Source of the DNA: Oikopleura dioica
Taxonomy: Eukaryota; Animalia; Chordata
Direction of reading: 5' to 3'
Length of the DNA: 64,000 bases
NCBI GenBank assembly: GCA_907165135.1
Contig: OU015568.1
Location: forward strand, 310,001-374,000
Shown: positions 11,694-32,641 of the stretch, piece by piece
How the letters are laid out: every line of letters starts with the position of its first letter
How positions within the stretch are numbered: position 1 is the first letter of the stretch
Notes under the pieces: model-generated
Told to the model about the DNA's origin: nothing
The model's database searches: none
The model's input: the letters and a program-made list of their open reading frames with translations, nothing else
Position numbers and translations under genes: made by a program

Positions 11694-14600
11694 ATCGGAA
11701 ACCTATAACAGCAAATTGCGTCAAAGATACAAGTGTAAAAAAAGCTGTCGACGCAGCAGCCTTATGCTCGGGTTCCCAAACGCTTTGGCTTCCAGAAACG
11801 CAAGAACAGATCGATTTCCATTCTTCGAATGACGTCTGGATTGACCTCAAGTTCGTCGAAGGCGACGCAGTTGAGTATCAGACCATAACTGGACAACCCG
11901 CCCCGCCTGCCGATTCGAAAATAGTCGAGCTCTGTCAAGCTGCTTCAGCTGCTGATGGGAAATGTTTCTATTTGGAACCAGAGGGTGGAGTCTTAAAATG
12001 CTTTGCTGACGACTGCGATAAGAGCAGTGATAAACATAGAACAATGTGCATGGATGCGGCTTGCCACACAGATCCAACGAAATGTTGTGGATATGAAGCT
12101 GGTCCAGTACCAGACGAAGGGCCTTTTCACTGCGAAATATCCGAAATTGCGAATTCTACGGACTGCAACGCCGATGGATGTCCTCTAAAGAAGACATTTG
12201 CTGATGCGAAAGCCCACTGCGAAGCGTTCAATCTTAAGCTTTTTATGCCCCGCACAGAGGAAGATGTAAGCTTCCTGATGAACCAGCCCTACGAAGTCTG
12301 GATCGGCGTCAACGCGGATACATCAACCAGTCCAACACGATATCTTTACTCCTCGGGCATCGCTGCTGACGCTGCTACAACGGAATTTAGTGACGGGACA
12401 TTCTGTGAAGATCCAGTAACACACGGATCCTGCGCAACAATCAGAGAAGACAAAGGTTGTTCGGAAAACGTCGATTGCTCGGAGCTCCATTACTTCATTT
12501 GCGCTGAGTTAGATCAAACCGAAACAACTTGCTCGTACAATAATTTGGGAGATGTTTTCACCGGCCCGCCGACTGAAGTCATTCCCGATCCAGCGCCAGA
12601 AACTCCAGAAGAACCAGCGGATCCCAACGCGCCGAAAGTTGTCATCGCTACTTCTAGAGAGCTTCCTATCTTCAACAGCGCCGATCAGTTCTTCAACATC
12701 GCCTCAACAAATCTTACTGCACGCTCGTTCGCAAGAACCTATTCACCATTCAGCGGAAAATGCAAGCCGAATAATCAGTACAGCGACATGATGAAGCATC
12801 GATATCGAGGCGCAAGTATTCAGTTCAAGAAAGAAGAAGGATTTACCCCGCAGAATCCAATGTTCAGAATTTTCCGTAGCCAATGTCTCGGGAAGAGTAA
12901 AACATTCGGCACGATCTCGAAGGGCGATAAATACTCCGACTCGAAGCTCGGGTGGCAACAAGAATGCTCCATCAACGGAGAACTCGTAGAAATGACGATG
13001 ACAAAGGGGCGAAAAGACGCTTGGCCCGATGTGACGAGAATCGGAAAGATCACAGCTGACCAGGCGATTGGAGAGTACTTCATGCCCTTTTGGAACTTCG
13101 ATGTGGAGAGCGCATATCCTGACGAAGAGAAATTCGCTCAATCTCCTGGCTCCGAGTGCGAGCCACCACTTCAGAGCGTCAATCGACCAGGTCACGTGGA
13201 ACCAGCACTCTTTGAAATCAAAGAAGTCTACACGAAAGAGAATGCGCAAAAGATGCACAATTGGTGGGGAGCCGGAAGTTTTGAATTCAAAATGGACAGA
13301 AATATTTTTGATGCAGTTTGGGATTTGCAGAATTCCCTGACTGTGGATGATGCAGTTCGTCTGTGCGACACGAAGAGAAAAGGGGCAACTAAATGGGGTC
13401 CGACAACGGTTGAAGAAATGAGATACATCAAGCATCTCGCGAAGACATCTAATCAAGACATTTGGATAGAAAATAATGCAGACACATCGAGCCTGTGCTC
13501 TCAAACAAGCACAAGAATAGTCCGAAATGAACCCGAACATACGAATCCGACTCATTGTGTGGATAATAATTTGCCGGACAACGCTCATACTCCGCACCCA
13601 GTTTGCCAAAAGTTTTATCATTGCGATCATCAAAATGTGGTCGGCGGTACTGTTGTGAAGGAATGCGGTCCTGGAACTGTCTTTATTCCATTGACTGCTA
13701 TTAGCGGCACTTGCGGATGGCCTGATGCGTCGAATACAGCTGGATGTTGTGATGAGACTCAATTCGACTGTTCAACTACGACCACTACAACGAGTACGAC
13801 GACTACAACGAGTACGACAACGACTACTACGAGTACTACAACGACGACAGAAGAACCGGGTACTACGGCGGAACCAACAACATCGGGAATGACATCAACG
13901 GGAACGACGACAATAATAGCAGGTTACCCAAATCTCATTTACATTGATTCGTCTGGTCAGTGTTCTTTCTGGCAGGATAAAGTCCCAACACCTGACTCAA
14001 ATGGAGTTGTAAACAAAAATGCTAGATTTCTTTGCGCTCCTCCTAATCTCGGCTGGGGCTACGATCAGAAATCGTTCACCTACACAACCGGTCAGTGCTT
14101 ACATGGAATGTCTGTCCACACGCCTTGGGGCAAAAGAGTTTGGCAATACTCAGCACATATTCTCGAGATCGACAACAATCCGCCAACTTTCAAAACACCC
14201 TGCGACTGGCGAGCGAAAGCCGGCTGCGGCACTGTCTATTTCGATCTGAGTCCAGAAGACGCCGATGGCGATAGTGTTAAGTGCCGATGGTCGACAGCTT
14301 ATGAAGCCAGCGAGCTCGCTTTTGAGACGATTTCTGATTACAGCGACGGGGCTTTTTTCTGGGCAACTGATCGAGGGGGCTGTGTAATTGGGTACGACCC
14401 GACGAAAGACAGCTGTAATGGTGGTAATTGTGATCGAGCGCGTCCGTTGGCGATTCAGGTTGAAGACTACGAATACGATCCAAATATTGACCCGGTTGAT
14501 CCATACTATGATAGGTGGTACGAACACATTGTAGCCGGAAATCACGATGAGTTCAAGCCGAAATCCTCGATGCCACTTGTTTTCATGGCGATCATAGAAG

Positions 14601-17600
14601 ACGGAACAGTAGATGAGAGCCATATTCTCAAAGATCCAAGCTTCGATGGTCTTTGTGCTCCATCAGCTGCCTGGAAAACATATGCAGATGCAAAAGCATT
14701 TTGCGAAGAAAATGGCGGAGCTCTTTTTTCTCCTCAAAATTCTGCTGATTTGAGTCTAATTGATGAATATCCATGGCAAGATTATTGGTTGAATGCAGTT
14801 GCAGTTGGCGACGATATAATCGACATGAACACCGGTGGACTAATTTTTTCAGGAGCTGGTTGGTCCACTACTTGCCAAAATCCAGCGTTTTCCGATAATG
14901 TTGAAAAAGTCTACGTTTCTGCAATGAGTATGGGTTTCGGAGTTGATTGTATGCTCGACCAACACATGGACACGACGAAGCCATTCATTTGCACACATCC
15001 ACTTCTTGATTGCAATGCGATTCCGCCAAGCTCTTGTGCTATTGCAGCGAAACCAATGACATACTTTGAGGGAGAGGCGTACTGCAAACAAGCCGGTATG
15101 GAAATAGCGATGCCGAGGACAGAAGAAGAGCTTCTTTGGTTCAAAAGTTTCGGCGAAGAAATTTATGTAAGAGCTCGATCTCATCAAGGCGCTGATTTGT
15201 TAGATCCATATGACAATTCTGCAATAACGGGAACTGACTTCAATACAAGATGCACTTCAGCAAGCAGTTTTACTGACTCAACGACCAGCGATCCCAACGA
15301 AAGAGCATGCGTCAGAATAAAGTATGACCCGGCAAATATCGCCGATGACTCAATGGAAAGCTGCCACCTTGCTACGAATTGTGCTAGTACAGTGGCAAAA
15401 ATTATTTGCTCCAAGCCGACGTATACTGATGACATGGCTTGCTACAACACTCCTGTTCTAGAAGCAGACTGTGAAGTCCTTGGTCCTACACCAGTTGACG
15501 ATATAGAGGGCCTTTTATCCCCAGGTAGAGAGATTTTCGCACCAAGAACGGAAGAAGAGATAGAATTCCTAACTCAACTTCCTGATACAGAAGAAATTTT
15601 GCTCGGCATCACTGTCGATAGCAAAGCAAAAATGTATTACAGAGACGGATCAAAAGTCAACAAGAAAGCTGAACCTTGCTCTTTGGATAAGAAAACTACT
15701 GATGAAGGGCTTCTTCTGTACAATTTGGACACCGATACATGCCGAACGATCCCGGCATCTTCTGCAACAAGTCAATACTACATCCAACGACCGCCAGGCG
15801 GATGCTCTGTATTTCAGGCAGGCTGTACTATCGGTGCCGCCTGGATTGATCCGTCGCCAGGAGTTGACGACTCTGTTGTTTATGAACTGAACGAGGCGGG
15901 TGACGCGCCGAAGAATTCTATTATCATTCCTTGGAAGGGAGTCTTGACTTACGAAGCACGGTATTATTCAAGAATTAGATCAGCTCGGTGGACGAAAAAG
16001 CCGTACAATATGATTTGCCCGCAGCCGGACGGCGATGGTGGAGCAATTTGTACCTGGTCTCCAGTAGAAGATCAACTTTCCCAGACCCACAAGCTGTGCG
16101 GCATCTGTGAACCTGCCATCCAAGGATCAGAAAGTAGAGAACATTGCTTGACGATATCATTTAAACCATGTGAGCCAGAAATTCCAGATGTCTGCGCTTT
16201 TCAGAGGGAAAATCTTTATAAAGATATCATATGGAACGGCGAAGGAACAATGGATCAATTTCCGTCAGTCCCACCTGCTGATTTGTGGACAAATACGCTT
16301 TCAGGGGCCAATTCTGACTCTGTTTGGTTCGAGTATCAAGCATCTTTGGACACAAATTTAAATCCGGATACTCGAGTTGATGTTCAAATGAAAATCTTTG
16401 GCGACTTTGACATCGCGGATCTGAACAAAATGTTCGATAATGATCAAAATACCGCCTTTACATTCGATGAACCATGCGGCGAAGACTACAACAACGAGCT
16501 CAAATTCCGATTCATTGACCCGGAAGCTGTTACAGATGTAGATTGGGACGCTGACTTTGTCTTAGTCATTTTTGAAAAAATAACGATTCAACTATCCGAA
16601 GACTACATTGGTTTACCTCGATTTGATTCAGCACATGCTGACAATTCCAATGCAAAATCAAACGGATTCTCCCTTGAAAGTATAAAAGGGTACTACTATG
16701 TGCTTGAATCAGATGGAACTTACACCGAAACCCTTATCTCCTCGTTGATTCCAACTGATGACGTCTTCACTTTCGAAATCCGATTCGCTTCCGGAGCAAT
16801 CGTTGCAAACTCTCTTACCCTCAAATTCGAGCATGCTGAAATAAGTATCGCGGAACTCAAGATCCACTGGAAAGAATGCGTCCATGTCCCCTATTTGAGC
16901 GGAAATTACCAGCCCGGGCAAGTGATCATCCCCGGAATCGACCGCGAAATCTGCGCTGCTGATGCAAAACCGGCGAGCTTGGCAATGTATGGCTACGAAA
17001 TCGTCCTCAATGGAGATACGCTTCAAGAAGGATACTACAACATCGAAGACGATGAGCACCCTATTCAACAGTTTACATGGTCTGCGATCAAAAAGTCTTC
17101 GGGGACTTTTAGTTCAGTAGACGCAGCACGGGCAGCATGTCAAATCGATGGCAAAGAGCTCATCTATCCCTTTAAAGCTGAGCAAGAAGAGTTTTGGAGA
17201 AAAGTCGTTGAGTCCGTCGAAGCTGTCAGCGCTGCTGATACTGTCTTTGCCGTCATTGGTTTAACTCACACTCACACAACAACAACAAGCGGTAAGTTCT
17301 TCCCACCAGGGCAGTTGAAAGCGCTCACCCCGGGAAACGAAACAAACGGCTACACGAATTTCTTTGGATCGAACACGGCGGCCTCAGCGTCAGCAGCGTT
17401 CGTTGAGATTTCGAATGGAAACGCTTTCTATTTGTCGAGTACGCAAGGCGCCGGCTGGACTTGGATGGACATGACGAACCCTCCTGCTTCCTGGAACACA
17501 GTGATTTGCATGGGCGTCAGTGAAAAAATAACAAACTGCAAGAATTTGGACGATTGCGTCGCAACCGAGCCAGAAAAATCAGAATGCAGATGCCCCGATG

Positions 17601-18472
17601 GCTCGTTAGCTGATCCGGATCCTGATGGAGATCCAGCCACGAAGGATTTGGAAACTTGTCCTGCTTATGATGCCTGCAGCGACATTGCCGGTTGCAGTGA
17701 TTCTTGCGAAAATGAATACAAATCGCCATTTTTCCGCTGCGGCTGTCCGCCGGACTTTGATGGCGTTCGCTACCAGCTTGGCTACGACGGACAAACTTGT
17801 CTAGATATAAACGAGTGCGAAACAGGGAGTCATCTTTGCGAAGAATTCACGACAGAGTGCAAGAATCTCGATGAACGAATCGGTGACGGCTACGAATGCA
17901 TCTGCAAAAAGACTGGAGCAGTTGTCTCGGCGAAAACGAACGGATTTTACAGTTGCCTTGATTGCCCTTGCACAACTTGCGCTAGTCCTGATGCACTTTC
18001 TGGATTCTGTGCAAGCTATGCTGATTGCTCAACACCTATCGACTTGAAAACAGATTTGTCAGGCCTCACTTGTCCTGCGGATTTTTTCTGTGAAGACTTC
18101 AAAGACCTCAAATGCCCGATTTCTAAAATTTGCTCCCACGTTGCAGAGTGCATTTTCGACTGCGAAGGACTGGGGACCGGATGGTTCTGCCCACTGGAAA
18201 AATGCTTGGAAAAAGAAGATTGCGAGTTCGCCTGCGTTGATGATACGAAATGCTCGTATCAAGTTCTGGCAAATAATGGAAAATGCGTGGAGCAAAGTGA
18301 ATGTTGCCAAGAATGTGGCAAGGATTTTCTTGACCCAGGAATGGATAAACCTAAAATTTTTAATCAAAATTTTTTTTCTCAATTTTATAACGTTTATTTT
18401 CTGAAGCAAATCAAAAAAGATAATTTGTTTTTTTTTTTATTTTTAAAAATTTTTTCGCAAAAAATTTTTTAA
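11694..18472 (+). CDS. Giant extracellular mosaic protein: multiple C-type-lectin-like repeats, peritrophin-A/CBM14 chitin-binding domain, Thr-rich mucin, cadherin/Sib-like segment, EGF/Ca-EGF and Cys-rich tail
   Basis: The frame is open from an acceptor at 11693 for ~6.7 kb. Repeated 'kTy.DAka.C....l.lf.P.teE...f.....vWi' units; CBM14-like CVDNN..CQKFYHC..ECGPGTVF..TCGW..C at 13556-13750; Ca-EGF CLDINECETGSHLC. The first exon and true C-terminus (after ~18350) are unresolved. Confidence 0.8.
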
Positions 18473-18691: not shown

Positions 18692-20752
18692 ATGATCAAG
18701 GGTGGAAGTTTTGCCGAGCAGGGTATTGCTCCTTTTGTGCTGATTGTGATTGTTTATATGTTCATGTCGGTTTTAGTGAATTTGGAAAGGTTTACTGGGA
18801 TTGTCATGAAAGAAGAAGAGTAAGTTTGAAATTTTTGACGAAATAGATTTTTATCTTGTTGAAAAACTGATTTTTTAATTCAGATATTTCCACGATAAAC
18901 AGTTCGGCAATCATTTCTTGAAAAAGAAGCCAAAAGAAAACATTTTCCAAATTTTATCTGAGGTCGAGGATTTAGAACCTACAGAATCAGAGCTAGAATT
19001 CGAAGCAGAGGAGGAAATTCTTGAGCCACAGAAAACTGAAGTGTTAGAAAAAATAAAAGAAGAAGCACTTCGACCGTGTCTGCTAGACAGGAGCGCTCAA
19101 AGTGACGTGGGCGAAGTTCTAGAGCCGAAATACAAAATGGATCCATCTAAATTCCTGGCCGTGGCTGGTTCTCGCGGCCCAAACAACCAAATCTTCTCCC
19201 TCCGCGACTCAATTTTCTTCGCCATCGCTCTCAATCGCACCTTGATCATCCCTCCATTCTTCAAGCACAACCGCGGAGACCCAACTGCAAACAGTTCAAA
19301 CACAGAAATTGTCGAGTTTCATCAGCGAATGGACTTGAAAAGGATCAAAGAATTGATTTCCGTCATCGAGCCGAAAGAGGCACTTGAGAAATGCGGCGAG
19401 GCGGGATTTGATGTTCTCTACAGAATTCAACGGATTTGTCAGCCGGACAATTTTGATAGAATTCAGGTATTTAGGCTTTTATGGAGGTTTTCAGCCTTTC
19501 AGCTGTTTATGTTTTCAGGCGATTCGTGATTTCTACAATTTCCCTTCAACTCCAGAAACAATCGATTACGCACAAATCTGCCGCTCAAAATCGTCTTTGA
19601 AAGAGATTCCAACAGTTCCTTCCCGAGAAATCATCGAAAGCGTCTTCCACGGCGGAAACATCATTCAAATCAAATCGACAGAAAATGCAAAAGAGGAGAT
19701 TCAAAAGTACTACGCTTCGGATTATAAATGTCCCCTCGCGACTTATGCTTACAATAGTTCGCCGATTTTGAGGGCGAAGGGCAAGGAGAACGAAATTGGC
19801 GAAATTTCAAGGGATATTATTGCTCATACGCAAAGGTAAAAATATATAAAGATTACTCAATTAAATTTTTATTAAATCTGATTGGCCTAACGACTGAAAG
19901 CGGAAATTTTATTCGTTAAAAAATGTTCAAAATTTCATTATTTAAAAGAAAAAAAATCGAAAAGCCGCGTTCGGCTTCGAAAAAAAAAAGAAAAATTCGC
20001 GGTTTTTTTTTCTCCTTTTTAAAACGGCGGTTTTTAAATAAATTTCGTTTTTAGGCCAAAGCATCTCGAAGATTTCGTCGATTCCTTCATCAAAAAATAC
20101 TCTTCTTCAAAGAAATTCATCTCAATCCACTGGCGCTACGACGAAAGCGACTGGAAAAACGAGCAATGCAAGTCGAGAAAGTTCCAACTCGTCTGCCAGA
20201 ATTTCGAGCTTTTGACGGATCCGGAGCAACTGGCGAGTTATTTGATGAAATTTTTCGAAGCGTCCGGAGCCGACCAAGCCTTTGATTTCGTTTATATTGC
20301 TACTCCGGTGAGAAATTGAAAATTTAATTCTAGCTCTTAATTTTTCCTTCAGCCGAATGAGCTGAAACTCATTCAATCCGTCCAACTCCAATTCGAGACG
20401 AAAAACAAGATGAAAATCGTCACTCAAATTGAGGCAATAAAATTTCAATTCTCTGCTATTTTTAAGAACGCTTTTCAGATGATTGAATCGCTGATCGATC
20501 ATTATGGCAAAAACTGCGGCGAAAAGTACGAAAATCTGCGGTTCGAAATCTTGTCTTTGGCGGAAATGGAAGCATGCATTACTTCCAGCGTTTTTTATTC
20601 CTCTTTTGGCTCAAGTTGGTCTTTTAACGTCGAAGCCGAAAGAGCGGTTTTGAGCAAAGGAGCGACTTTTTTGGTAAGAGCGGATTAAATTGCCATTTTT
20701 GACTGGTTTTCAGAACACGCGAATCTTCGAAGCAGACATCAAACGAAAGTAA
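18692..20752 (+). CDS. GDP-fucose O-fucosyltransferase family (POFUT-like) type II membrane protein, paralog 1
   Basis: N-terminal TM anchor; GPNNQ..LRDSIFFAIALNRTLIIPPF; ISIHWRYDESDW; FVYIATP; EMEACITSSVFYSSFGSSWSFNV. Multi-exon. Confidence 0.8.
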
Positions 20753-21392
20753 AAAGACCTAAAAATACTACCCAAGCAATATTTCTTCAAAAAATATACT
20801 GCCAATAAAATATATTCAATTTAAACTTCTGGCAGTCAAAAATCAAAACACAGGAAAGGAAGCTAAATAGGATTTGGTTTTTGCGGGCGGTTCTTGCGGA
20901 AGCGAAAAAATGTGCACACGTTGCGTTTTCTTAAATTCTTATCCACTCAAAATTCTAGAGTACTTAAGCCACTTGAGCCGCACGACTCTTCTTCTTTCAT
21001 TTAATGAAAAAGCCGGCTAGAAAAGTTCAAATAAATGAGGCTTTAAAATATTTCAAAAAGAAAGTTTTTCTACTGACAGTAACGGACACTTTGATACAGT
21101 AAGCGCTACTGTATCAGCTTGAAAATGTCAAATATTGGCCAAAAAAAAAGCTTGTTTTAAAAAATATCGCCTTTTTTATATAAAAAATCATGAAACTAGC
21201 CCTCTTGCTTCTTATCCCATAAAAACAGAAAAAATTATCCAAGCAATTATTTCCCGTGTTTGTTATCAACACATGTCGTTCTTTAAAATAAAGTAGCGGT
21301 CGGCGAGTAGCGCGGCGCTGTTCACTCCGCTTTTTCCCGCACCGAAACTAATTTTTTTCAACGTTTTTTTTGAGAGAAAAATCAATTAAAAA

Positions 21393-24300
21393 ATGACGGT
21401 TTTCCGGAAACTGTTGCTTCCGATTTTGATTGTTTTGTTTTGCTTTTCGTTTTTGTTTATTTTTGTAGAGAATAATCAGAAGCTGACGTTTGAATTTTCA
21501 TCAAGGTAATTAATTAACATTTTTCTCAATTTTCAATCAATTAAGAAAAAAATATTAATAATTTGATAAATTAATTAATTGTTTAAAAAAAATTAAAAAA
21601 ATTATATCTAATAAAATTCTAAAAATAAAAATTCAAAAATAATATTTTTGTTTAATTTAATAAAAATAATGAGTTTTTGATTTTATTATTTAATAATTAT
21701 CAAATTTAATAACTAAAATAATTGAAATTTTAATTTTAATATTTTTTCAAAAAATAACGATTAATTTAATAGCATACGGCTTGAAAAGTATTTCCCATCA
21801 CTGCCGAAAACCGATGAAAATAACCCAAAAGCTGAATCCGCAGCTGAAGATTTATCAAAATCAAATGACTTAAAAAATCAAATAAACGTCGAGCGCCCGG
21901 TTTTATCAAAATTAACGGGCGCCTGTGCGCTCGACAGAGAAGTGCAGTCCGATGTTGGGAAGACAATTGAGCCAAAGTACAAGCTCGATCCGACGAGATT
22001 TCTAGCCGTGGCTGGTTCAAGAGGGCCGAACAATCAAATTGTGTCGATTCGAGACTCGATCTATCTAGGCACTGGTTAGACTCTCTCAATTGAGTACCCG
22101 CTCTTCCCAAAATTGCGGTTGATTATCTTACCTCAAGCTAACCCTATTTTCATGAGCGCAGACGTGTCCTGAAAAAGCCAAAATGCAAAATCAAGGAGCT
22201 GATCTTTTCAAAGATAATTTCTTTTAAAAACGCGGCGCGAGTCTAACCTAATCAAAAAGCCGTCGCTCTGAACAGGACGCTGATAATTCCGCCCTGGTTC
22301 AAACACGATCGTGGCGATCCAACTTCCAATGGTTCAACCACGGCGATCGTTCCTTTTCATCAAAGGAAAGTGGTTTCATTTTTGTTTTAAGGATATAAGC
22401 TATGAATTTGAACTTTCGTAGCGCCTAAATGCGACGTAGGATCATTGTCATTTCAAAAGCAGTCCTACCTAAAATTGCACGTAGAACTCAAATCTGGAAC
22501 TTTTGAAAAAAATCTTATGAAAAATTTTCTCTCTAGAGCGATTTCAAATCTTACGCTCTCGATTGCTCGAAATTTTTACACTAAATCGGTCGAGTTTTTT
22601 CGATAAATAACTTCTCTTAACCCTTATCTACAAAATTGACGGATCAGTTTTCCCTAATTCCGACCGAAACCGATTTAAGAGCGATTTCCATGAGGCTTAC
22701 CAAGCGCGCGAATAGTGTAAAAAGCGGCGCGCTGGACGCTCGCTCTCTCAACTCCTCTTTTCCGTGAGAGTGGCGCGGTTGAGCGGAGCGCTTTGATTGG
22801 TTGCACGCGAAAAAGCACAAAAAGGAGAAAAACTCGAGCAAGAAAGAGGAAAACGCTAGAATGAAAATTTGAGAGAGTTTGGAAATAAAAGCCCGTCAAT
22901 TTTCTAGCTTTACATCATCAAAATAAAAGACACGGTTTAGTTTTAGCGATTCAATGGAGAAAATTCGAGCAATCGAGAGCGTAAGATTTGAAATCGCTCT
23001 AGAGAGAAAATTTTTCATAAGATTTTTTTCAAAAGTTCCAGATTTGAGTTCTACGTGCAATTTTAGGTAGGACTGCTTTTGAAATGAAAATGATCCTAGG
23101 TCGCATTTAGGCGCAACGAAAGTTCAAATTCATAGCTTATATCCTTAAATCTCGAAGTTGCTGGCTTTTTATCCCCGGAATGAGAAGGGGGCTCTTATCT
23201 AAATACCGTACTTATCAGAAGAGTAGCGGTCTAAGAACGAACATGGATTAATTTCCTATTAATAAATCGCTACGCATAAACATTACCAATGTTCCTAGTA
23301 AATTATATAATGATAATCATCAGTAATTAATTATAACAAAAGCAAAGGACTCCTTTTATTTTCGGAGGCCTCATAATTCGATGAAAATTGCGACTATTTT
23401 GGCAAAAATTTTCCTGCAAATTTTCGACCAATCAGATTCTGCTGTTTGGCCTTAAGGCCAATCAGATTTCAGAAAAAATAAATCGAAATTCCGTCATTTC
23501 CTCACGCCAGCTCTCTTATTCATCTTTCTGTGTAAGTCAACTATTTTGCTGGTACCCCAATCGCAACCAAATAAAAAAGAATGGACATGTCAAAAATCAA
23601 ATCGCTCATTTCGGTCATTGAACCCGAAGACGCGCAACAAGCTTGTGGCGAAGATGGATTCGACATAATCTATAGACTTCAAACGATTTGCCAAAAAGAG
23701 AATTACCCGCGCGTCCAGGTGAGCCACCTTTTACATGTGTAAAAAGATTAGGCGCAGTTTTGAGCGAAGGGATTGCATAAATAACTCTCACAAGACCCTC
23801 TGGGCTCGAAAAACCTTCAACTTCCCTTCATTTTAGGCGATCGAGGAGTACTACAATTTTACCTCTTCTTCTTCCCTCAATCTCACTTATTACTGCCAAA
23901 ACTGGAAGAAACAACAACTCGCTCCCTTTGAAACCTTTCCTCCTCCAGACGAGCTGAAATCCTATAAAGCAGGAAATTTCCTTCAAGTGGCCAGTTTGGC
24001 CGACGCTCGAAAGAAACTCAGCAGTGATCACAAATGTCCAGTGGCGAGCTATCCTTACAAATGCACGCCGATAATGAGACAGTGGCACAAACCAGAAGCG
24101 GATGATGGCGAATTGTCAAAGGCGATTTTTGAACATACTCAAAGGTCGCTTTCTCTCTTCCGAAATCTGTCTAATCCCCTTTTAGACCGGAACATCTGGA
24201 GATCTTCGTCGACTCCTTCGTCCGAAAGTACTCGCCAGACAAGAAATTCCTCTCGATCCACTGGAGATACGACGAAAAAGACTGGAAAAACGAGCAGTGC

Positions 24301-24813
24301 AAGGCAATCCAATACAAACTGATCTGCGACAACTTTGATCTTCTTTCTGATTCCAAAGCGATCGCGGATTTTCTCGGGAAACATTTGGACAAAATTGGCG
24401 GAGAAGAAGTTTTCGACTTTATTTATATTGCTACTCCAGTAAGTCAGCCGTCAATTTTTGTCGATAAAAGATCAAACTTGAATAACCAATTTCAGCCTTC
24501 CGAAATGGAGCTGATCCACGGCGTCCAGCGAGAATTCGAAAATCAAGGAAGACTCAAAATCGTCACTCAAATGCAGCTCATCGACGCGCTTGCGGAGAAC
24601 TACGCTAACTGCGGCGAAAAATACGAAGACCTTCGATTTGAAATCTTGTCGCTCGCGGAAATGGAGATCTCCATCACGGCTTCAACTTACTATCTTTCTT
24701 ATGGCTCGAGTTGGTCTTTCAACGTCGCGATTGAAAGATCTGTGATGGGGCGAGGAGAAACTATTTCGAACACGGAGATTTTCTCCGATTTGAAAGAAGG
24801 AAAGAAACTCTAA
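21393..24813 (+). CDS. O-fucosyltransferase family, paralog 2 (tandem duplicate)
   Basis: TM exon MTVFRKLLLPILIVLFCFSFLFIFV; GSRGPNNQIVSIRDSIYL|AVALNRTLIIPPW; LSIHWRYDEKDW; GSSWSFNVAIER. Colinear with paralog 1. Confidence 0.8.
22069..22259 (+). mobile_element. GC-AG intron bounded by 10-bp TIRs (introner-like)
   Basis: ggttagactc (22074-83) pairs with gagtctaacc (22239-48). Removal restores YL-A-VALNRT. Paralog 1 has no intron at this position. Confidence 0.7.
22391..23144. mobile_element. Non-autonomous DNA transposon with ~190-bp near-perfect TIRs and TTAA flanks (Kolobok/piggyBac-like)
   Basis: ttaa|ggatataagctatgaatttgaac ... gttcaaattcatagcttatatcc|ttaa. Confidence 0.9.
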
Positions 24814-25108
24814 TCTATTCTCAAAATTTTTTTGCTACATAACTGCAAACTTCTTCAAAATTAAATTTTAAAATTCATCATTTTATACTCAATAAACGAA
24901 AATTCTTGATTATATATAGTAGGTAGTTCATATACATGTACTTGATATTTTTAGTATTTATGCAGAGATTACGTCATTGATTGAAGGGAATAATAATTCA
25001 ATACAGAAATGCAAGTAGTGATACCGATCTTTTTTATGAATAAAAAGAAGCATTCACAAGGGATTTATATCGGAGGCCTCACTTCATAAAATGAAATATG
25101 ATGTTTAT

Positions 25109-27281
25109 TCAATATTTAATATCCGAGAGATTTAAAAGGGCTTGACACTCTTTGCTCAGCTTTTTGTTGGAGTTTATACTTCTTTCTTGATTTCTTTTTG
25201 TTTCATTTTCTGAATAAATCTTCAGTATTCTCTCGATTAAGGCATTATTACCTGCATCTTTAAAATTTTTAATCAGATCAAAAAAACTATCTTTGACTTC
25301 AAAACCAGCAAAGCTCAGTATCTTCTTGCTATATTCTTCCAGACTACGAGCATGATCATCAGCGTCAACAATCATGAAGTTTTTTTTCAGCCAATTTTGA
25401 TTTTCTTTATCTTCAGAACTTTCTTTTGCGAAATCGCAAGCATCTCCGAGATCAATTGATTCAAAGATGAGTTTGATATCAAATTGATTTTCGCTTGAAA
25501 GGTTCTAACATTTTTTAAATAAATTTGAGTTTTTGTGAGATCCTGACTTGAGATATTTTTAATTTCGTCAAGACTTATTCTGTCGCTTATTTTTACGACT
25601 GGAACGAGAGTTTTGCAAGTCTCTGAAGCTAACTTAGAATCAAGAGGGTCGCATTGGCTGTCGCAATTTGATTCCGTCGCATTTGTCTTGCAGAATGGCG
25701 GTGAACAGAGAAGGAGTTGAAAATCTAGTTGCTAAGGAGATAAAACCTTTATGAATTTCAATGATTGACGCACATTCATGTCGTTTCTGAGACGCATACT
25801 CAGAATCACTAATAAAAACCTTTCCCGTCATGAAAGCTTTACAGACAGGTACCATTGAAAATACACCGGAAATCCGTTTATTCTAGATTATCCTTAGGAT
25901 TTACCATCAAGAATAAGGGCACATACCATAAAAGGGAACTCTTTAGCTAGGATGAACCGACAAAGGAGCAGATAATAATGTATCGTACAACAAAAGAAGT
26001 GATTTTTTGGAGCCAATTAGCTTGCAGTTTTATGCTGCTTTAAAGCCCTGTCCACTAAAATCGACCTGAATAGCTCGCTCTCTGGCACATGAATCATATG
26101 ATACACTTTCTTACCTGCTCCTTTGGTGTCTTATTCTATCTTAAGTACTCCTTTGTTTTTGGTTTACCCCTTAATGAGGTTCAATTCGTGATGAATTCGT
26201 CTGGATATTCAGAATAGCGATCACAAGAGTTAACTAAATTTGTTGAAATTAAAGCCGGAACGCATATCGACCCATTTTTGGGTAAGGCGCTGAAATATGC
26301 CTTCATAAATCATCATTTTCTAGAGCTAGAAAAACAGATGAGAGATATCATATGTTCCATTCTTGAAGTTTATTGTCTGAAGATCATACTTATGATAAAA
26401 TTTGGGTTAATATATACAAGAAAACGGGTCTACGGCCTCTTACCCAAAAATGGGTCGATATGCGTTCCGGGAAAAAACTTTTACATGCGTTCAAGCGTCA
26501 ATAAGGATTGTCCCTGTTGACAATGTTTGTAGAATATTTGCAACTCTAAGCAGAGTCGTCGATGTTTGTTTCGAAAAACAAAGTTTCCTCTGCTTTCGAT
26601 TGTTCCATGCATATTTAAGTCATCATCGAATCGGTCGAATGTGAGTGATTGGTCGTAGTGATCGATGAAATTGCAGTTGAGATTGTGGACTAAAAGTTCT
26701 TTGCGCAATTTTTGGGTGCTTTTCGAGAATCCAGATCTGGAGTACTGGTAAAGAGGCTCGTAAATGTAAAAGGCGTCTTCGTTGTTATTGAAAATCTCAT
26801 CCATGAAATTTTTTGAATTTGGGATTGTGGGACTCATGATCTGAAAATTGGATAATAACCTCGGATATCCGTTTGAATACAGCCGAAATACAAAATAATG
26901 GAGTATTTTTTGTTACCGAATTTCCAAGAAAAGCTCTAATTTCAACTTATTCAGATTTTTATGGTTTTTTATAACCTGCTTTTTCATATCAATATGTTCA
27001 TCGATTGTTTCGCGTTTGACTTTGAGCGTTACTTACAATGATTGCTTTTCTTAAAAAGTTGCCAAAAATATTCTCTCTGATTTTCGTCCTAAACGAGTTT
27101 TCTTGAAACCCTCATTATCAATTTTAGAAACGCAATTCAGCTGCTACCATAAAATTTCAACAAAAACGATCAAGAAGATGAGAAAAATGAGAGGCATAAT
27201 TTGCAGCATAAAAAGCAAGTCTGACAAGAATGAAATAACTAGTTTGGGAAAACAGGGAATCGATAATTTCATGCCTCTCAT
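25109..27281 (-). CDS. Carbohydrate sulfotransferase (CHST1/3-like), degenerate PAPS motifs
   Basis: FMDEIFNNNEDAFYIYEPL; LLCSPPFC...CDPLDSKLASETCK...VVKI; TM-like exon near 27150-27210. Exon boundaries are approximate. Confidence 0.6.
26249..26501. mobile_element. MITE family A copy (in the CHST intron)
   Basis: ccggaacgcatatcgacccatttttgggtaag pairs with cttacccaaaaatgggtcgatatgcgttccgg. Same ends as 29598-30099. Confidence 0.8.
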
Positions 27282-27595
27282 GTTTAACTATTTTTCTCAA
27301 AAAAAATACAAACTTTCTTGTCAACTTTCCTTAATTTCTTCGCTATCGATTCGCTTTGCGCTGCATTTTTAAATAACAACATAACAATGAAGCATAAGAA
27401 CAATGACAAAAATAATTTTTGTTTTCTGATTTCCATTACTTTCCGCATTTCTCTATTTCTTTAACTCCGGACATCTAAATCCTCCGTGATATTTGGTGAC
27501 GGGGGCGCCCTTCAATGAAATCGAAGTGGCACTAAAAATTCGCACCGAGTCTTTCGTAAAAATATATGAGTTGTAGAATCATTTTCGTTCAATAG

Positions 27596-30500
27596 ATGGG
27601 TTCTGCGAAAAGAGACCGCTCTGTCAATTTCAAGTGTAAATTATTTTTGATTTTGGCGTTTGCGTGTTTATTTACGGCGAGTTTATATTTTTGGAAAGAG
27701 AAAGATGTCGAAACAATGCAGAAGATCACTTACAAGTCGACTACTGTTGATAGCCTCATTTCAAATAACGAAGCAACAAGCAAAGAAGAGAAAGAGAAAA
27801 TCATTATTTCCGTGAATATGGGCGGGCCTAACAACCAGATCTGGGGCCTTCGCGAGGGTTTATTTTTATCCCAGCTGATGAATCGCACTTTTGTTGCTCC
27901 TCTATTTTTCCGACATTTCACTACTGTTGGGCATTTCTTTTCTAATCCGTCTGTTTTTATTGATATTGACAATTTATCAAGTTTGGATAAGAAAATATCG
28001 TTAGTGACAATTACTTATTGTGACCTTTCTATTTTGAGCGCCGGTCTAGAATTGGCTATTTTCGAAAAACCTAGTTCTACCCCCTAAGATTTTTCAAAAA
28101 ATAATTTGGGCCCCATTGATTTCGGTCATTCTATTTTCAATTCTTCGGTGCATTATAAATTATAATTTATAATCGCGAATCAGCTGACTTTCAATCACCG
28201 TAAAAATATAAAAATAAAATTCGAGTCCATAAAAAGCAAAATAAAATTAATCGACCCAGCTGATGTCAAGTCCGTATGCGGCGACTCCTTTGATCTTATT
28301 CTGGATTTTCATCCGGAAAGAACTTATGAGACATGGACGAAGCTTACTTATGAGTATTTGAATATGGACTTTCAAAAAAAAAATAGGAAATCGGCGTTTT
28401 AAAAGAAAAAAAACTAAAAAGCTATAAAAACAACGCCGCTAAGAACAGAAAAAATTGTGCTGAGAAGAATTGGATCAGGAGGAACCGAATCTTTAATGAG
28501 ATTTCTAAGCGGATTTGACGGAAAGCAATGCATTTTGCTAAAACATCCGTACTCCTTGCTCCCCTGGAACATGATATTCCGTCATCGGTTTAAGAACTTG
28601 GAGCCATTTGTCGAATCAGACTTCGAACTGTTTAGAAAAGTGATCGAAGCAACCAGTCGCCCGAAGAAAATCAAGAATCTAGCTGAGAAGATTGCGGCCA
28701 TCATCAAGTTCGAAGGATTGAAAGAGCATAAAATGGCGGCACTTCATTGGAGATACGATTTGGATGATTGGGGAGCAGGCAAGGATGAAACTGAAACAAT
28801 GCAAAAAGTGCTTGCTATTCGGAAAAATCCGATGGTTTTTGCAAAGTTTATCGAAGAAGAGCTTGGGAAACGAAACATATCCAGACTCGTTATTTTCAGT
28901 CCTCCAAACGACTCCGAATTCGTCGAGCAGCTTCGTTCAGAAATCAAAAATATCATTATTTTCACGGAAAAAGAAATTCTCTCAATCTTCAAACGCGACT
29001 TGGACAAAATCGACCTCGATTCGGAAATCTCACTCGTCGAGCAAGAGATTTGTTTTCTCTCAGACTTCTTTCTTTACTCAGATCCTTCGACTTGGAGCAT
29101 GAATGTGAATCTTGAAAGAGCTGTCGCTGGAAGAGACGATAATTTATTGAACCTTCACTTTCAAATTGACGAAGAAAATTGCGATTTGGAAATACGACTT
29201 GGGAAGAAAAATAAGTTTGCAGTGTTACCTTTCGTTTCATTTCCAGGCAGCGGTAATACGTAAGTGATTATCTGGCTCTGCACACGGGCGATCAATTGAA
29301 TTTATCTTAGGCAAGTTCAAGAACCAAAAATAGCAGCGGAAGTTCGCCTCGATTTTCAGTCGCATTAAGATCTTAATGCCAAAATGATGATATGCCATTT
29401 GAAATACGAGAGAATATTCCAGACGGCGGATTTCACGTCGTCTTAAGTAAATGCAATTTATGGAAAATGCGTATCTGTCGAATTTTATTATTAAAATGAC
29501 CTCAGTTCGTCTTTTAATTTTCGTGATTGAACGAGACATCTGCGAAAATTATCACATTTAAAATGCGGCAATAATCAACATTAAATGTGACATATATTTA
29601 CGCCGAAACGCATATCGACACATTTTTTTGTAACGCGCCCTTTGGACCAAAGGCTTTGGTTATGGTCCATAACTTATGGAGCTACTTTTCGATGAGGAAC
29701 TCAATTCTCGATTAATTTTTCGATACCCGTCCGGCCTTCTCAGAAGTAAAGAGTCAATTATTTAAAAAGCTCAGGCTCTAAGCTTTCCGTAGAGCCCAAG
29801 AAATCTTAGCGCTTGTCGGTTTGTGGCCATCTACAACCAGTTTAAATGTCTACTTACTTTCTTTTTGGTCTATTTTTGGAAGAAACTCTTCAATTTCATC
29901 GCGAAAACATGACTTCAAGAGCTCACTCAAGGTCACAAACGGGCGCTAAGATTACTTGGGCTTTAATGAAAGCTCAGAGCCTGAGCTTTTTAAATAACTG
30001 ACTCTTGACTTCTGATATCATATGGCGTCAAAGGTGCTTACCCATAAATGGGTCAATATGCGTTCCGGGAGAAACAAATTGTATGCGTTCCGGCGTTAAG
30101 AGTAGAAATTACAATCTGTTTTTTGAAAAACCAAAGCAAATAAATTTTTGAATGTTAAAAATATCTTTTTTTTAGTTGGACGCGGATGCTCCTCGAAAAA
30201 TCAACTGGAATTTACACTGGAAGCGTTTACGAAGACAAAAAATTGTTGGAGGCTGGTTTTCTTGGTGAAGAAACAGTGCCATCGGATGGTGAGACGCTCT
30301 TTCAGAAATCTCATGAAATCAAGGACGAGAGAATTCCGAACCCAAAAGCCATTCTTTTTCTCATTCGAAATCCATTCGACGCGGCGGTGGCAGAGTGGAA
30401 ACGACGACACGGAAAAGGGCACACAGCGAATGTCGAAGAAGAAATTTTCGTTGGAGAAGAGTGGGAAAAAATGGGAAGCTATTTTTTGAGAAAGTGGAAG

Positions 30501-32641
30501 ACTCTAGCGGAAGAAGTTATTGACCAAAACATAGGAAGGGGTTTCCTCATAAAATACGAAAGAAGAAAAGCTACAGTTGACCTTAGTCGCGAAAGCTTAG
30601 CCCTCGAAAACGCACCTCAACGGTAATCGGTCATGGATTTACTCACTGCGCGAAAAGATCAAATAGTTTTTGAAAAAAGAGAAAGCTTTAAGACTCTTTG
30701 ATCGAGTACAAATCGATTGTGGGCTTCTCGACCTTTATCAGATAATTTATCTGAGATAAACCTAACTGCTTAAAGACCCCAATTTCCTTAAAACCGTAGA
30801 CGAATTTTTGACTTTATGAACGAGAAAGCAACTTAAACACTTGTTCAAAAAAGCTTTTGTATTTATATTGGTTGAGGACCCTCTGAAAGGAAAAGCGAAC
30901 GTTCCACTTCATATTTTCTTTTACGAAAGTCTCAAGGCGAACGCGATCCATGAAATGGAAAACATCTTGGATTTTATTGAAAAAGAGAATGTTTACACTG
31001 TTTCGGACAGAGAAATTCGATTGAAATGCTTGAAAGAAGTAAGTTTTACTCGGAAACTCGAATGATCTAATACTCTTTTTTAGACACTAGAAGAAACTGA
31101 GAAATTTCATCGCCCAAAAAAGAGCCTTCTTTTGAATATTTTACGAACGAAATGATTGAAAAAGGAAATCAGTACATCAACGAAGTTTACGAGCTTTTTG
31201 ACAAAGAAAATTTCCCGCTTTTTGAAAAACAAAATTATTTAAAAATTGTCCAAAAGAAGATATCGCCGGAAAGCAGCGAATACCGGGGAATTCCACTGAA
31301 AGCGGACCTCGAATTATGGCAAAATGAGTGTCAGCTGCAAGATGGTCTGATTTTTATGAAAAAACACAAGACAGCATCAACGACATTCAAAGGCATAGTT
31401 GACAAATGGCTCAAAATAAACAATGCCTTCGAGAAGAGTGAAAAACCTCAAATGGGACCTCAAGGAGGATGTTTTCCAGCTATGTTCAACGAACTCTGTT
31501 GGGAAGGGAGCAAGAGAAATGATCCAGTGATAGGCATTACGTATCACTTTCGCTGGAACATGGATTATTTGCCGGGAATATTTGACGCGAACAGAGGAAA
31601 AGTCAAGACGTTTACAACCATTCGAGATCCACTCGCGACTTTTCGATCAACCTACAATTATTTTTATCGAAATTCGAACGATTGCGACTGGCCCTGCTGG
31701 GGCGCCCCATTCAAACAAATTCTTTCCAACACTGTCGAAGATGTTGATGCCAAGCCCTTTTTGCCGATCGAAGAATTTCTTGATATTCTTCCAGAAGCTT
31801 ACGACTCTTCAGCTCCCTATGCTTACCGAGTGAGTAATCCCCAGTCGTTCGAGCTTGGCATGGACTTTGACAGAATGAAGGACATGAAATACGTCCAGGA
31901 GAGTTTGGCAAAATTAGACAGCAACTTCGACCTCATCCTGCTAACCGAGTATTTTTGGGAGGGGATTGTCTTACTTCGGCATTTACTTTGCGCGGACTAC
32001 GAGCATTTGTACATTGAAAACAAAAACCAAAGAAACTACAGAATTGAGCCCTTGAACGAGGAGCGACAAGCAACTTTCGACGAATTCAATAAAATTGATC
32101 TTCTTATGTACGATTATTTTAATGCTTCTTTGCATCGAAAAATTGAGGCTTTTGGACAAAAGGTTTAGTCATTTATCTATCAACACAGAAGCGTAAAAAA
32201 GAATCTAGAAAATGGAAGAAGAAATAGAAATTGCGAAGAGCACTTTTTCTCGCTGCGCAGAAGGTGTTATTGATTGCACTGTAGCCAAACTGGCCTTGAA
32301 TCGGGAATCTCCTCAAACTCAAATTATTAATTTTGAGAAAATGAACATCAGTGAGTATTTAAAAATAATAGGACTGAGTTTAAATAAAATTTGTCAAGTT
32401 GCAAATCTACAATTTGCATTTTAATTTTAACTTTATAAAAACTCTGGCGAAAGAAAATGGTCATGGAGCTTGCGAAAACCGCGGACATCCATTTACAAAC
32501 GCCAAAATGCTCTACGAGAGCGGCTCATGGAATTATCTGCACTTGTCGGAAAAAACGTGTGCTGAAGACAAGCTTCTTGCAATGAGTGTTGACAGTCAAG
32601 TGCCTCTGACGACAGAATTCAAAGAGAAATATAATTTATGA
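27596..32641 (+). CDS. Putative tri-domain Golgi enzyme: TM anchor + O-fucosyltransferase + WSCD-type sulfotransferase + galactose-3-O-sulfotransferase
   Basis: FucT motifs [14 protein letters not shown] and [11 protein letters not shown]. The same ORF continues to SFPGSGNT|[18 protein letters not shown] (GT-AG intron 29260-30175), then [14 protein letters not shown] 31152-32168 carries [12 protein letters not shown] and [17 protein letters not shown]. Needs 1-nt corrections in A-runs at ~28425 and ~31120. Confidence 0.7.
29598..30099. mobile_element. MITE family A copy with a nested palindromic MITE (29740-30015)
   Basis: Outer cgccgaaacgcatatcgac ... tatgcgttccggcg. Inner tcagaagtaaagagtcaattatttaaaaagctcaggctct pairs with agagcctgagctttttaaataactgactcttgacttctga. 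Confidence 0.8.

What the first reader, a model, noticed from the sequence alone, without database searches (positions are those of the whole stretch)
27596..32641. Putative three-enzyme glycan assembly line in one polypeptide: fucosyltransferase + two different sulfotransferases
Seen in sequence: one TM anchor, then an O-FucT-family domain. Its ORF (28457-29259) runs without a stop into [10 protein letters not shown], which splices canonically (GTAAGT 29260...TTTAG 30175) to [18 protein letters not shown]. The tail of that domain ([13 protein letters not shown]) shares ORF 31152-32168 with [12 protein letters not shown]...IRDP. Established: these are the PAPS-binding signatures of WSCD1/2-type and GAL3ST-type sulfotransferases, which are normally separate genes, as are POFUT-family enzymes. 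Both PAPS motif pairs look intact. Inference: a multifunctional Golgi enzyme that builds a fucosylated, multiply sulfated glycan, e.g. for larvacean house or tunic mucopolysaccharide. I know of no described enzyme with this architecture. Caveat: two single-base A-run corrections are needed (~28425, ~31120); neither lies at a domain junction.
Basis: partly seen in the sequence, partly recalled or inferred. Interest (0 to 1): 0.9.

Follow-up and report, generated by a model that had tools for sequence, protein, structure and literature searches.

The report
Three glycan enzymes in one protein
A gene of the planktonic tunicate Oikopleura dioica encodes one membrane-anchored protein that chains a fucose-adding-type enzyme to two different sulfate-adding enzymes, an arrangement I found described nowhere and a possible one-protein route to sulfated, fucose-containing sugars, though its expression and activity are not yet shown.

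Summary
Real at the DNA level. An 8-exon gene (27596-32641) reads as one 1102-aa type II membrane protein: single TM, POFUT-fold GT-B domain, WSCD-type sulfotransferase, GAL3ST-type sulfotransferase. Only one correction is needed. The A-run at 31116-31121 has a seventh A in short-read contigs of two DNA runs, so the frameshift is an assembly error. The donor-binding motifs of all three domains are intact, and dN/dS against paralogs is 0.06-0.18. No RNA of this lineage could be laid, so expression and splicing are inferred. This scan already found each pairwise fusion on paralogs (FucT+WSCD three times, WSCD+GAL3ST twice); I confirmed them. This locus is the only triple I detected in the genome, and I could not confirm it in other lineages. 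The genome search finds no sialic acid synthase, CMP-sialic acid synthetase or sialyltransferase, so the WSCD-type domain probably does not sulfate sialic acid here; fucose added by its neighbour is the best guess. Verdict: new architecture built from known families; substrates unknown.

The parts
27596..27999 (+). Exon 1: start codon directly after a TAG acceptor-like site, single TM anchor (about aa 14-33), stem, first GT-B motif GPNNQ (aa 77-81)
   Evidence: motif matches the family consensus
28000..28236 (+). Intron 1 (GT..AG, phase 2; ends uncertain, several in-frame options), holds a genomic repeat at 28033-28085
   Evidence: paralog L021 is continuous here
28237..28386 (+). Exon 2, GT-B N-terminal lobe
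   Evidence: 44% identity to L021
28387..28443 (+).
   Evidence: no indel in X1 contig 28111-31036; donor and acceptor context shared with L021 and L037
28444..29259 (+). Exon 3: GT-B C-terminal lobe (HWR at 28745-28753; EQEIC..STWS), ~30-aa linker, and the start of the WSCD-type 5'-PSB motif (29237-29259): first domain junction
   Evidence: PF10250 E 5e-5, below cut-off; profile hit to POFUT1 E 6.7e-9; Z 15.2 POFUT2, 14.0 POFUT1
29260..30175 (+). Intron 3, GT..AG phase 2, splits the 5'-PSB motif; holds a MITE-like element with 73-nt inverted arms (29740-29812, 29943-30015)
   Evidence: same intron position in four paralogs
30176..30534 (+). Exon 4: WSCD-type sulfotransferase core with the 3'-PB motif (LIRNPF)
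30535..30889 (+). Intron 4, GA..AG (in-frame GT alternative at 30541)
   Evidence: donor context shared with L021
30890..31038 (+). Exon 5: WSCD-type domain, YE motif
   Evidence: PF00685 E 0.0037; 50-63% to paralogs
31084..32162 (+). Exon 6: WSCD tail, linker, GAL3ST-type domain (KKHKTAST 5'-PSB, YHFRW, IRDP..S 3'-PB): second domain junction
   Evidence: PF06990 E 1.4e-28, 100 bits against cut-off 27; sulfotransferase fold, weak Foldseek hits incl. HS2ST/HS6ST
31116..31121 (+). A-run: six A in the assembly, seven in short-read contigs (assembly error)
   Evidence: table 4, runs X1 and X5
32209..32371 (+). Exon 7 (after a 46-nt GT..AG intron)
32454..32641 (+). Exon 8 to the stop codon (after an 82-nt GA..AG intron); C-terminal extension shared with the Oikopleura GAL3ST subfamily
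   Evidence: 70% to L022b

Best explanation
A functional gene for one type II Golgi protein with three luminal catalytic domains. Shown: the frame, single TM, folds, motifs and selection. Inferred: the GT-B domain moves a GDP-activated L-sugar (L-fucose most likely) onto a glycan. The adjacent WSCD-type domain sulfates a terminal sugar, most likely that fucose, since no sialic acid pathway is detectable in this genome. The GAL3ST-type domain sulfates a galactose-type residue of the same glycan. Fusion would keep the three steps in one Golgi compartment and in fixed ratio. The product is most likely a polyanionic glycan of secreted house or epidermal glycoproteins. The gene arose by domain shuffling in an expanded Oikopleura family: a FucT+WSCD gene gained a GAL3ST gene of the P0094 type at its 3' end.
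For: Read-corrected 1102-aa frame. One hydrophobic segment only. Short-read contigs tile 28111-32541 with 30-nt overlaps and cross both junctions. The fold search ranks POFUT2, POFUT1, NodZ, FUT8 and AtFUT1 in the first six rows, and the HWR and STWS motifs align to HLR and STFS of POFUT1. The four WSCD1 5'-PSB residues whose joint mutation lowered activity in PMC9304399 (P, G, T, W) are present. dN/dS is 0.18 (FucT), 0.12 (WSCD) and 0.06 (GAL3ST part) against paralogs. In X5 the only listed exonic indel besides the A is an in-frame 6-nt insertion; the others are non-coding or come from a paralog contig. Junction 1 recurs in L021, L022a, L023 and in metagenome contigs L036 and L057; junction 2 in L022b, L024 and Norwegian CBY21805/CBY31593. 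PF03102, PF02348 and PF00777 give no match in the genome, while GDP-mannose dehydratase does. House inflation needs PAPS-dependent sulfation (PMC3390340), and a wscd1-like gene is strongly expressed in Fol and giant oikoplastic cells (bioRxiv 10.64898/2026.03.31.715263).
Against: No RNA of this lineage: runs X11 and X13 gave only 4 and 59 partial reads, nearly all under 90% alike. No protein with all three domains turned up in any database search, though length limits and fragmentary representatives blunt these. The FucT-like domain is below the Pfam cut-off and lacks the cysteine pair that follows HWRYD in most relatives. dN/dS against paralogs averages over old branches and cannot exclude recent silencing. 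The expression data concern other family members. Absence of the sialic acid genes rests on an exon-wise search, and PF00777 had no positive control.
Confidence: 0.6

Rival explanations
1. One real polypeptide, but its domains act on unrelated glycans or one is inactive; the fusion is a tolerated by-product of rapid rearrangement in an expanded family and only shares one Golgi anchor.
For: Every combination exists in this genome: FucT alone, WSCD alone (L025-L027), GAL3ST alone (P0094), FucT+WSCD, WSCD+GAL3ST. The triple is single-copy and was not seen in other lineages.
Against: The pairwise fusions are old and recurrent. The trees suggest WSCD+GAL3ST arose or was kept in two separate subclades. 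All three motif sets are intact.
Confidence: 0.22
2. The locus yields mainly shorter products (for example a FucT-only form by retention of intron 3, or FucT+WSCD forms), or it is a recently silenced chimera, so the three-domain protein is rare or absent.
For: No RNA evidence. A stop follows the intron 3 donor at once. Three introns are best modelled as GA..AG. The listed exonic differences are 8 non-synonymous to 7 synonymous (a filtered subset).
Against: The WSCD tail and GAL3ST share one exon, and there is no second TM or signal. GA-AG introns are common in O. dioica (PMC7072748; 11% non-canonical introns, PMC8008620). No stop or frameshift is listed for a second DNA run.
Confidence: 0.13
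3. Assembly artefact or pseudogene: neighbouring paralog pieces joined by misassembly, or a true frameshift.
For: The assembly itself has a frameshift, and close paralogs exist.
Against: Independent short-read contigs at 99% or more identity cross both junctions and restore the frame in two runs from two studies.
Confidence: 0.03

Closest known systems
POFUT1/POFUT2 (CAZy GT65/GT68) and the wider inverting GT-B fucosyltransferase group (NodZ, FUT8, plant FUT1; Pfam PF10250)
   Same: Fold (Z 15.2 and 14.0); His-x-Arg and S/T-T-x-S donor-binding motifs.
   Different: 14-18% identity. It belongs to an unnamed family with GPNNQ and HWRYD motifs also found in Styela, a sponge and metagenomes. It is TM-anchored and fused, whereas POFUT1/2 are single-domain ER enzymes (own knowledge). 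Acceptor unknown.
WSCD1/WSCD2 sialate 8-O-sulfotransferases (PMC9304399)
   Same: 30-32% identity over the whole sulfotransferase domain, E about 1e-26, both PAPS motifs.
   Different: No WSC domain; a GT sits in its place. The genome shows no sialic acid pathway, so the acceptor probably differs.
GAL3ST1-4 family (PF06990)
   Same: Pfam hit far above cut-off; 5'-PSB, central His and 3'-PB present.
   Different: Oikopleura-specific subfamily with extra cysteines and a ~110-aa C-terminal extension. It lacks its own TM here. The genome holds about 100 PF06990 exon matches.
Multifunctional glycan enzymes: NDST, EXT1/2, chondroitin synthases, LARGE, DSEL; bacterial capsule multienzymes (own knowledge)
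   Same: Several catalytic domains for one glycan in one chain.
   Different: To my knowledge none joins a fucosyltransferase-type domain to a sulfotransferase or carries two unrelated sulfotransferases. Paper searches found nothing on it.
Two-domain paralogs in this genome (L021, L022a, L023; L022b, L024), noted earlier by this scan
   Same: Same junctions, linkers and intron positions.
   Different: Each has two domains; only this locus has all three.

Membership tests
PF10250 O-FucT / POFUT-like | Pfam gathering score 31.5 | tested here: not met
   Exon 3 alone scores 23.4-23.5 bits. The joined domain was not searched. Several relatives pass.
PF10250 O-FucT / POFUT-like | GT-B fucosyltransferase fold of the donor-binding lobe | tested here: met
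   Model pLDDT 84; the top six rows are all fucosyltransferases, Z 9.7-15.2
PF10250 O-FucT / POFUT-like | GDP-fucose-binding His-x-Arg and Ser/Thr motif | tested here: met
   The family profile aligns HWR to HLR and the S-W-S motif to STFS of C. elegans POFUT1; the window has HWR and STWS
POFUT1/POFUT2 proper | Stand-alone enzyme that fucosylates EGF or TSR repeats; orthology | tested here: not met
   Much stronger PF10250 matches lie elsewhere in the genome; only 14-18% identity to POFUT1/2; fused and TM-anchored. Activity not testable.
WSCD1/2 sialate O-sulfotransferase | 5'-PSB residues P, G, T, W and the 3'-PB motif | tested here: met
WSCD1/2 sialate O-sulfotransferase | WSC domain (PF01822) upstream of the catalytic domain | tested here: not met
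   No PF01822 hit in the exons scanned; the GT domain ends about 30 aa before the 5'-PSB
WSCD1/2 sialate O-sulfotransferase | Sialic acid as acceptor | not testable with these tools
   Indirectly doubtful: no NeuB, CMP-Sia synthetase or GT29 match in the genome
GAL3ST (PF06990) | Pfam cut-off 27 and both PAPS motifs | tested here: met
   100.4 bits, E 1.4e-28; motif residues conserved in alignment A2
GAL3ST (PF06990) | 3-O-sulfation of galactose | not testable with these tools
   Needs an assay
Type II Golgi enzyme | Short N-tail, one TM, luminal catalytic part | tested here: met
   Only one hydropathy peak, windows starting at aa 9-16; localisation itself not tested

The most novel reading that the evidence does not exclude
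The protein is a self-contained synthase for a sulfated fucan- or L-galactan-type chain: the GT-B domain polymerises or branches an L-sugar from its GDP donor, and the two sulfotransferases set two different sulfate positions. This would name enzymes for tunicate sulfated fucans and L-galactans (reported from ascidian tunics, PMC10609765; to my knowledge their enzymes are unidentified) and give the WSCD clan a first non-sialic-acid acceptor.
Probability: 0.2. Interest if true: 0.85.

Novelty: new variant of a known kind. Interest (0 to 1): 0.62.

Why it matters
Gene fusions point to steps that act in sequence. This one links an uncharacterised fucosyltransferase-fold family to a WSCD-type and a GAL3ST-type sulfotransferase in an animal whose house needs sulfated glycans to inflate and which shows no sialic acid pathway. 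It offers one protein with which to test how tunicates make sulfated, fucose-containing glycans and what WSCD-type enzymes do without sialic acid. The natural one- and two-domain paralogs are ready-made controls. The public assembly carries an error that breaks the gene.

Tried and rejected
Second A-run correction at ~28425: rejected (no indel in short-read contigs; an intron fits). Pseudogene by frameshift at 31116: rejected. RNA check: X11 and X13 come from another lineage or lack the transcript; 48-50 X13 reads show only a relative's spliced 5'-PSB junction. Search for a full-length triple in protein databases through long natural queries (L024 ORF, P0227): none found, low sensitivity. Metagenome scans: the first was empty; the second gave eight contigs, those with a visible 5' end being stand-alone GAL3ST genes. 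The Norwegian loci of the nearest GAL3ST relatives have no FucT or WSCD match within 10 kb. A recombination breakpoint near aa 665-672 is suggested by site patterns, but branch lengths do not separate it from vertical descent with losses, so I leave the order of events open. Single-sequence PDB search of exon 3 was not significant; the profile was. No PDB sequence hit for the GAL3ST profile. The joined spliced model was not sent to any search tool; exons were searched by reference, and the model was used only inside scripts.
Full report
Source. The genome has 64,281,565 bases in 19 contigs. A homolog named OKI2018_I69 sits on a contig of the same length as G000:C5. This fits the Okinawan Oikopleura dioica assembly, a Nanopore assembly polished with Illumina reads, with 11% non-canonical introns and a median intron of 49 bp (PMC8008620). 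The window is C1:310001-374000.

Observation. Listing in-frame splice options and comparing paralogs gives eight exons: 27596-27999, 28237-28386, 28444-29259, 30176-30534, 30890-31038, 31084-32162, 32209-32371, 32454-32641. Introns 3, 5 and 6 are plain GT..AG. Introns 2, 4 and 7 fit best as GA..AG, with donor contexts shared with paralogs L021 or L022b; each also has an in-frame GT alternative. GA-AG introns are frequent in this species (PMC7072748). The ends of intron 1 are the least certain. As assembled, the frame stops at codon 650; with one more A at 31116-31121 it runs 1102 codons to the stop at 32641.

Read test. Short-read contigs of DNA runs X1 and X5 (two studies; X1 may be the assembly's own sample) both carry the extra A behind 31115, so that frameshift is an assembly error. 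X1 contigs tile 28111-32541 with 30-base overlaps, and X5 contigs cross both junctions, which argues against misassembly. Listed X5 indels are non-coding except an in-frame 6-nt insertion in the stem and small indels that match a paralog's contig. RNA runs X11 and X13 gave only a few partial reads, nearly all under 90% alike. Expression and splicing of this copy are therefore not shown.

Both junctions lie inside exons. The GT domain, a ~30-aa linker and most of the WSCD 5'-PSB motif are in exon 3. The WSCD tail, a ~30-aa linker and the GAL3ST-type domain are in exon 6. There is one hydrophobic segment, near the N-terminus. An operon of separate genes, common in this species (own knowledge), cannot explain this layout.

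Domain 1. PF10250 matches exon 3 at E 5e-5, under the cut-off. A profile of 79 relatives hits C. elegans POFUT1 at E 6.7e-9 and POFUT2 at 4e-5, aligning HWR to HLR and the S-W-S motif to STFS. The predicted model (pLDDT 84) matches POFUT2 (Z 15.2), POFUT1 (14.0), NodZ (11.9), FUT8 (10.9) and plant FUT1 (9.7) ahead of other folds. The N-terminal GPNNQ motif matches the family consensus. The family includes uncharacterised Styela and sponge proteins. It works like a GDP-fucose-type transferase (inference); it is not POFUT1 or POFUT2.

Domain 2. It aligns with vertebrate WSCD1/2 over about 220 aa at 30-32% and keeps the four 5'-PSB residues mutated in PMC9304399 and the 3'-PB motif. It has no WSC domain. 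WSCD1/2 sulfate sialic acid, but this genome gives no match to sialic acid synthase, CMP-sialic acid synthetase or GT29 sialyltransferases, while GDP-mannose 4,6-dehydratase is found. The search works exon by exon and GT29 had no positive control, so absence is likely, not proven. I infer another acceptor.

Domain 3. PF06990 at 100 bits, motifs conserved, and a sulfotransferase fold with weak Foldseek scores.

Selection. Codon comparison gives dN/dS of 0.18 (FucT, against L021), 0.12 (WSCD, against L021) and 0.06 (GAL3ST part, against L022b). dS is near saturation, so these values are rough.

Family context. The genome holds FucT+WSCD genes (L021, L022a, L023), WSCD+GAL3ST genes (L022b, and L024 as an unbroken 674-codon frame), and single-domain genes of each kind. 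Crossing the hit lists shows no second triple. The 5' two thirds of this gene are closest to L021 (55-73%) and the 3' third to L022b (75%) and to the stand-alone P0094 (71-73%). In the trees the window/L022b GAL3ST groups apart from the L024 clade, and stand-alone WSCD genes fall between the two fused groups, so WSCD+GAL3ST fusion either arose twice or was lost repeatedly. L022b joins an L022a-like TM exon straight to the post-FucT linker, as if FucT had been deleted. Whether the triple is ancestral to these genes or a later recombinant is not resolved. Other lineages keep junction 1 (L036, L057) and junction 2 (Norwegian CBY21805, CBY31593), but no contig or protein found shows all three. One metagenome contig (L040) shows a chondroitin-synthase-like C-terminus running in frame into this same FucT subfamily, which supports general domain shuffling. 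Upstream of the gene lie two stand-alone FucT-like genes and a CHST-like gene.

Mechanism. Most likely (0.6): a Golgi enzyme that adds fucose or a related GDP-L-sugar and places two kinds of sulfate on one glycan of secreted glycoproteins. House inflation depends on PAPS-dependent sulfation (PMC3390340). A wscd1-like gene is strongly expressed in oikoplastic territories (bioRxiv 10.64898/2026.03.31.715263). Ascidian tunics hold sulfated L-galactans and fucans (PMC10609765). None of these concerns this gene copy. Rivals: uncoupled or partly inactive domains (0.22), mainly shorter or no transcripts (0.13), artefact (0.03). That the DNA encodes one three-domain frame is about 0.9.

Novelty. Multi-domain glycan enzymes are a known kind. 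I found no description of this architecture in the papers searched, which cover open-licence papers only. The scan had already noted the two-domain paralogs; this locus adds the triple, the read-based repair of the frame and the missing sialic acid pathway. The joined spliced model was not searched in any tool; exons were searched by reference, and the model was used only inside scripts. Interest 0.62.

Noticed in passing
L040:2-2776 (ENA metagenome contig, another Oikopleura-like lineage): A chondroitin-synthase-like gene (PF05679, PF02709) whose C-terminal end runs in one frame (1545-1967) into the same FucT-like subfamily as this gene: a probable GT+GT fusion. No such neighbour pair was seen in G000.
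   Followed up: partly
whole genome G000: No match to sialic acid synthase (PF03102), CMP-sialic acid synthetase (PF02348) or sialyltransferases (PF00777), although WSCD-type sulfotransferases are expanded (over ten loci).
   Followed up: partly
window 18692-24813 (+): Two tandem stand-alone FucT-like genes of the GPNNQ family, 3-9 kb upstream of the triple.
   Followed up: partly
window ~25100-26840 (-): A CHST-like sulfotransferase gene (FYIYEPL motif, recognised by eye; no Pfam hit for the exon tested) lies head to head with the triple, so the region is a small glyco-enzyme cluster.
   Followed up: no
window 11972-18472 (+): A 2166-codon open frame with C-type lectin and EGF domains and a Thr-rich stretch; a candidate secreted house-type glycoprotein.
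   Followed up: no
L022:~4770-4790 (-): Paralog L022b has a one-base frame break in an A-run between its TM exon and the linker, probably another assembly error; the join looks like a clean deletion of the FucT domain.
   Followed up: partly
window 29740-30015 and 28033-28085: MITE-like element with 73-nt inverted arms in intron 3, and a high-copy repeat in intron 1.
   Followed up: no
window 31190-31421: Run X5 holds two contigs across the WSCD-GAL3ST junction, one with 1 difference and one with 21 of 232: a divergent haplotype or an unassembled close paralog.
   Followed up: no
window 27590-27598: The start codon follows a pyrimidine tract and TAG directly, as at a trans-splice or 5'-UTR intron acceptor.
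   Followed up: no
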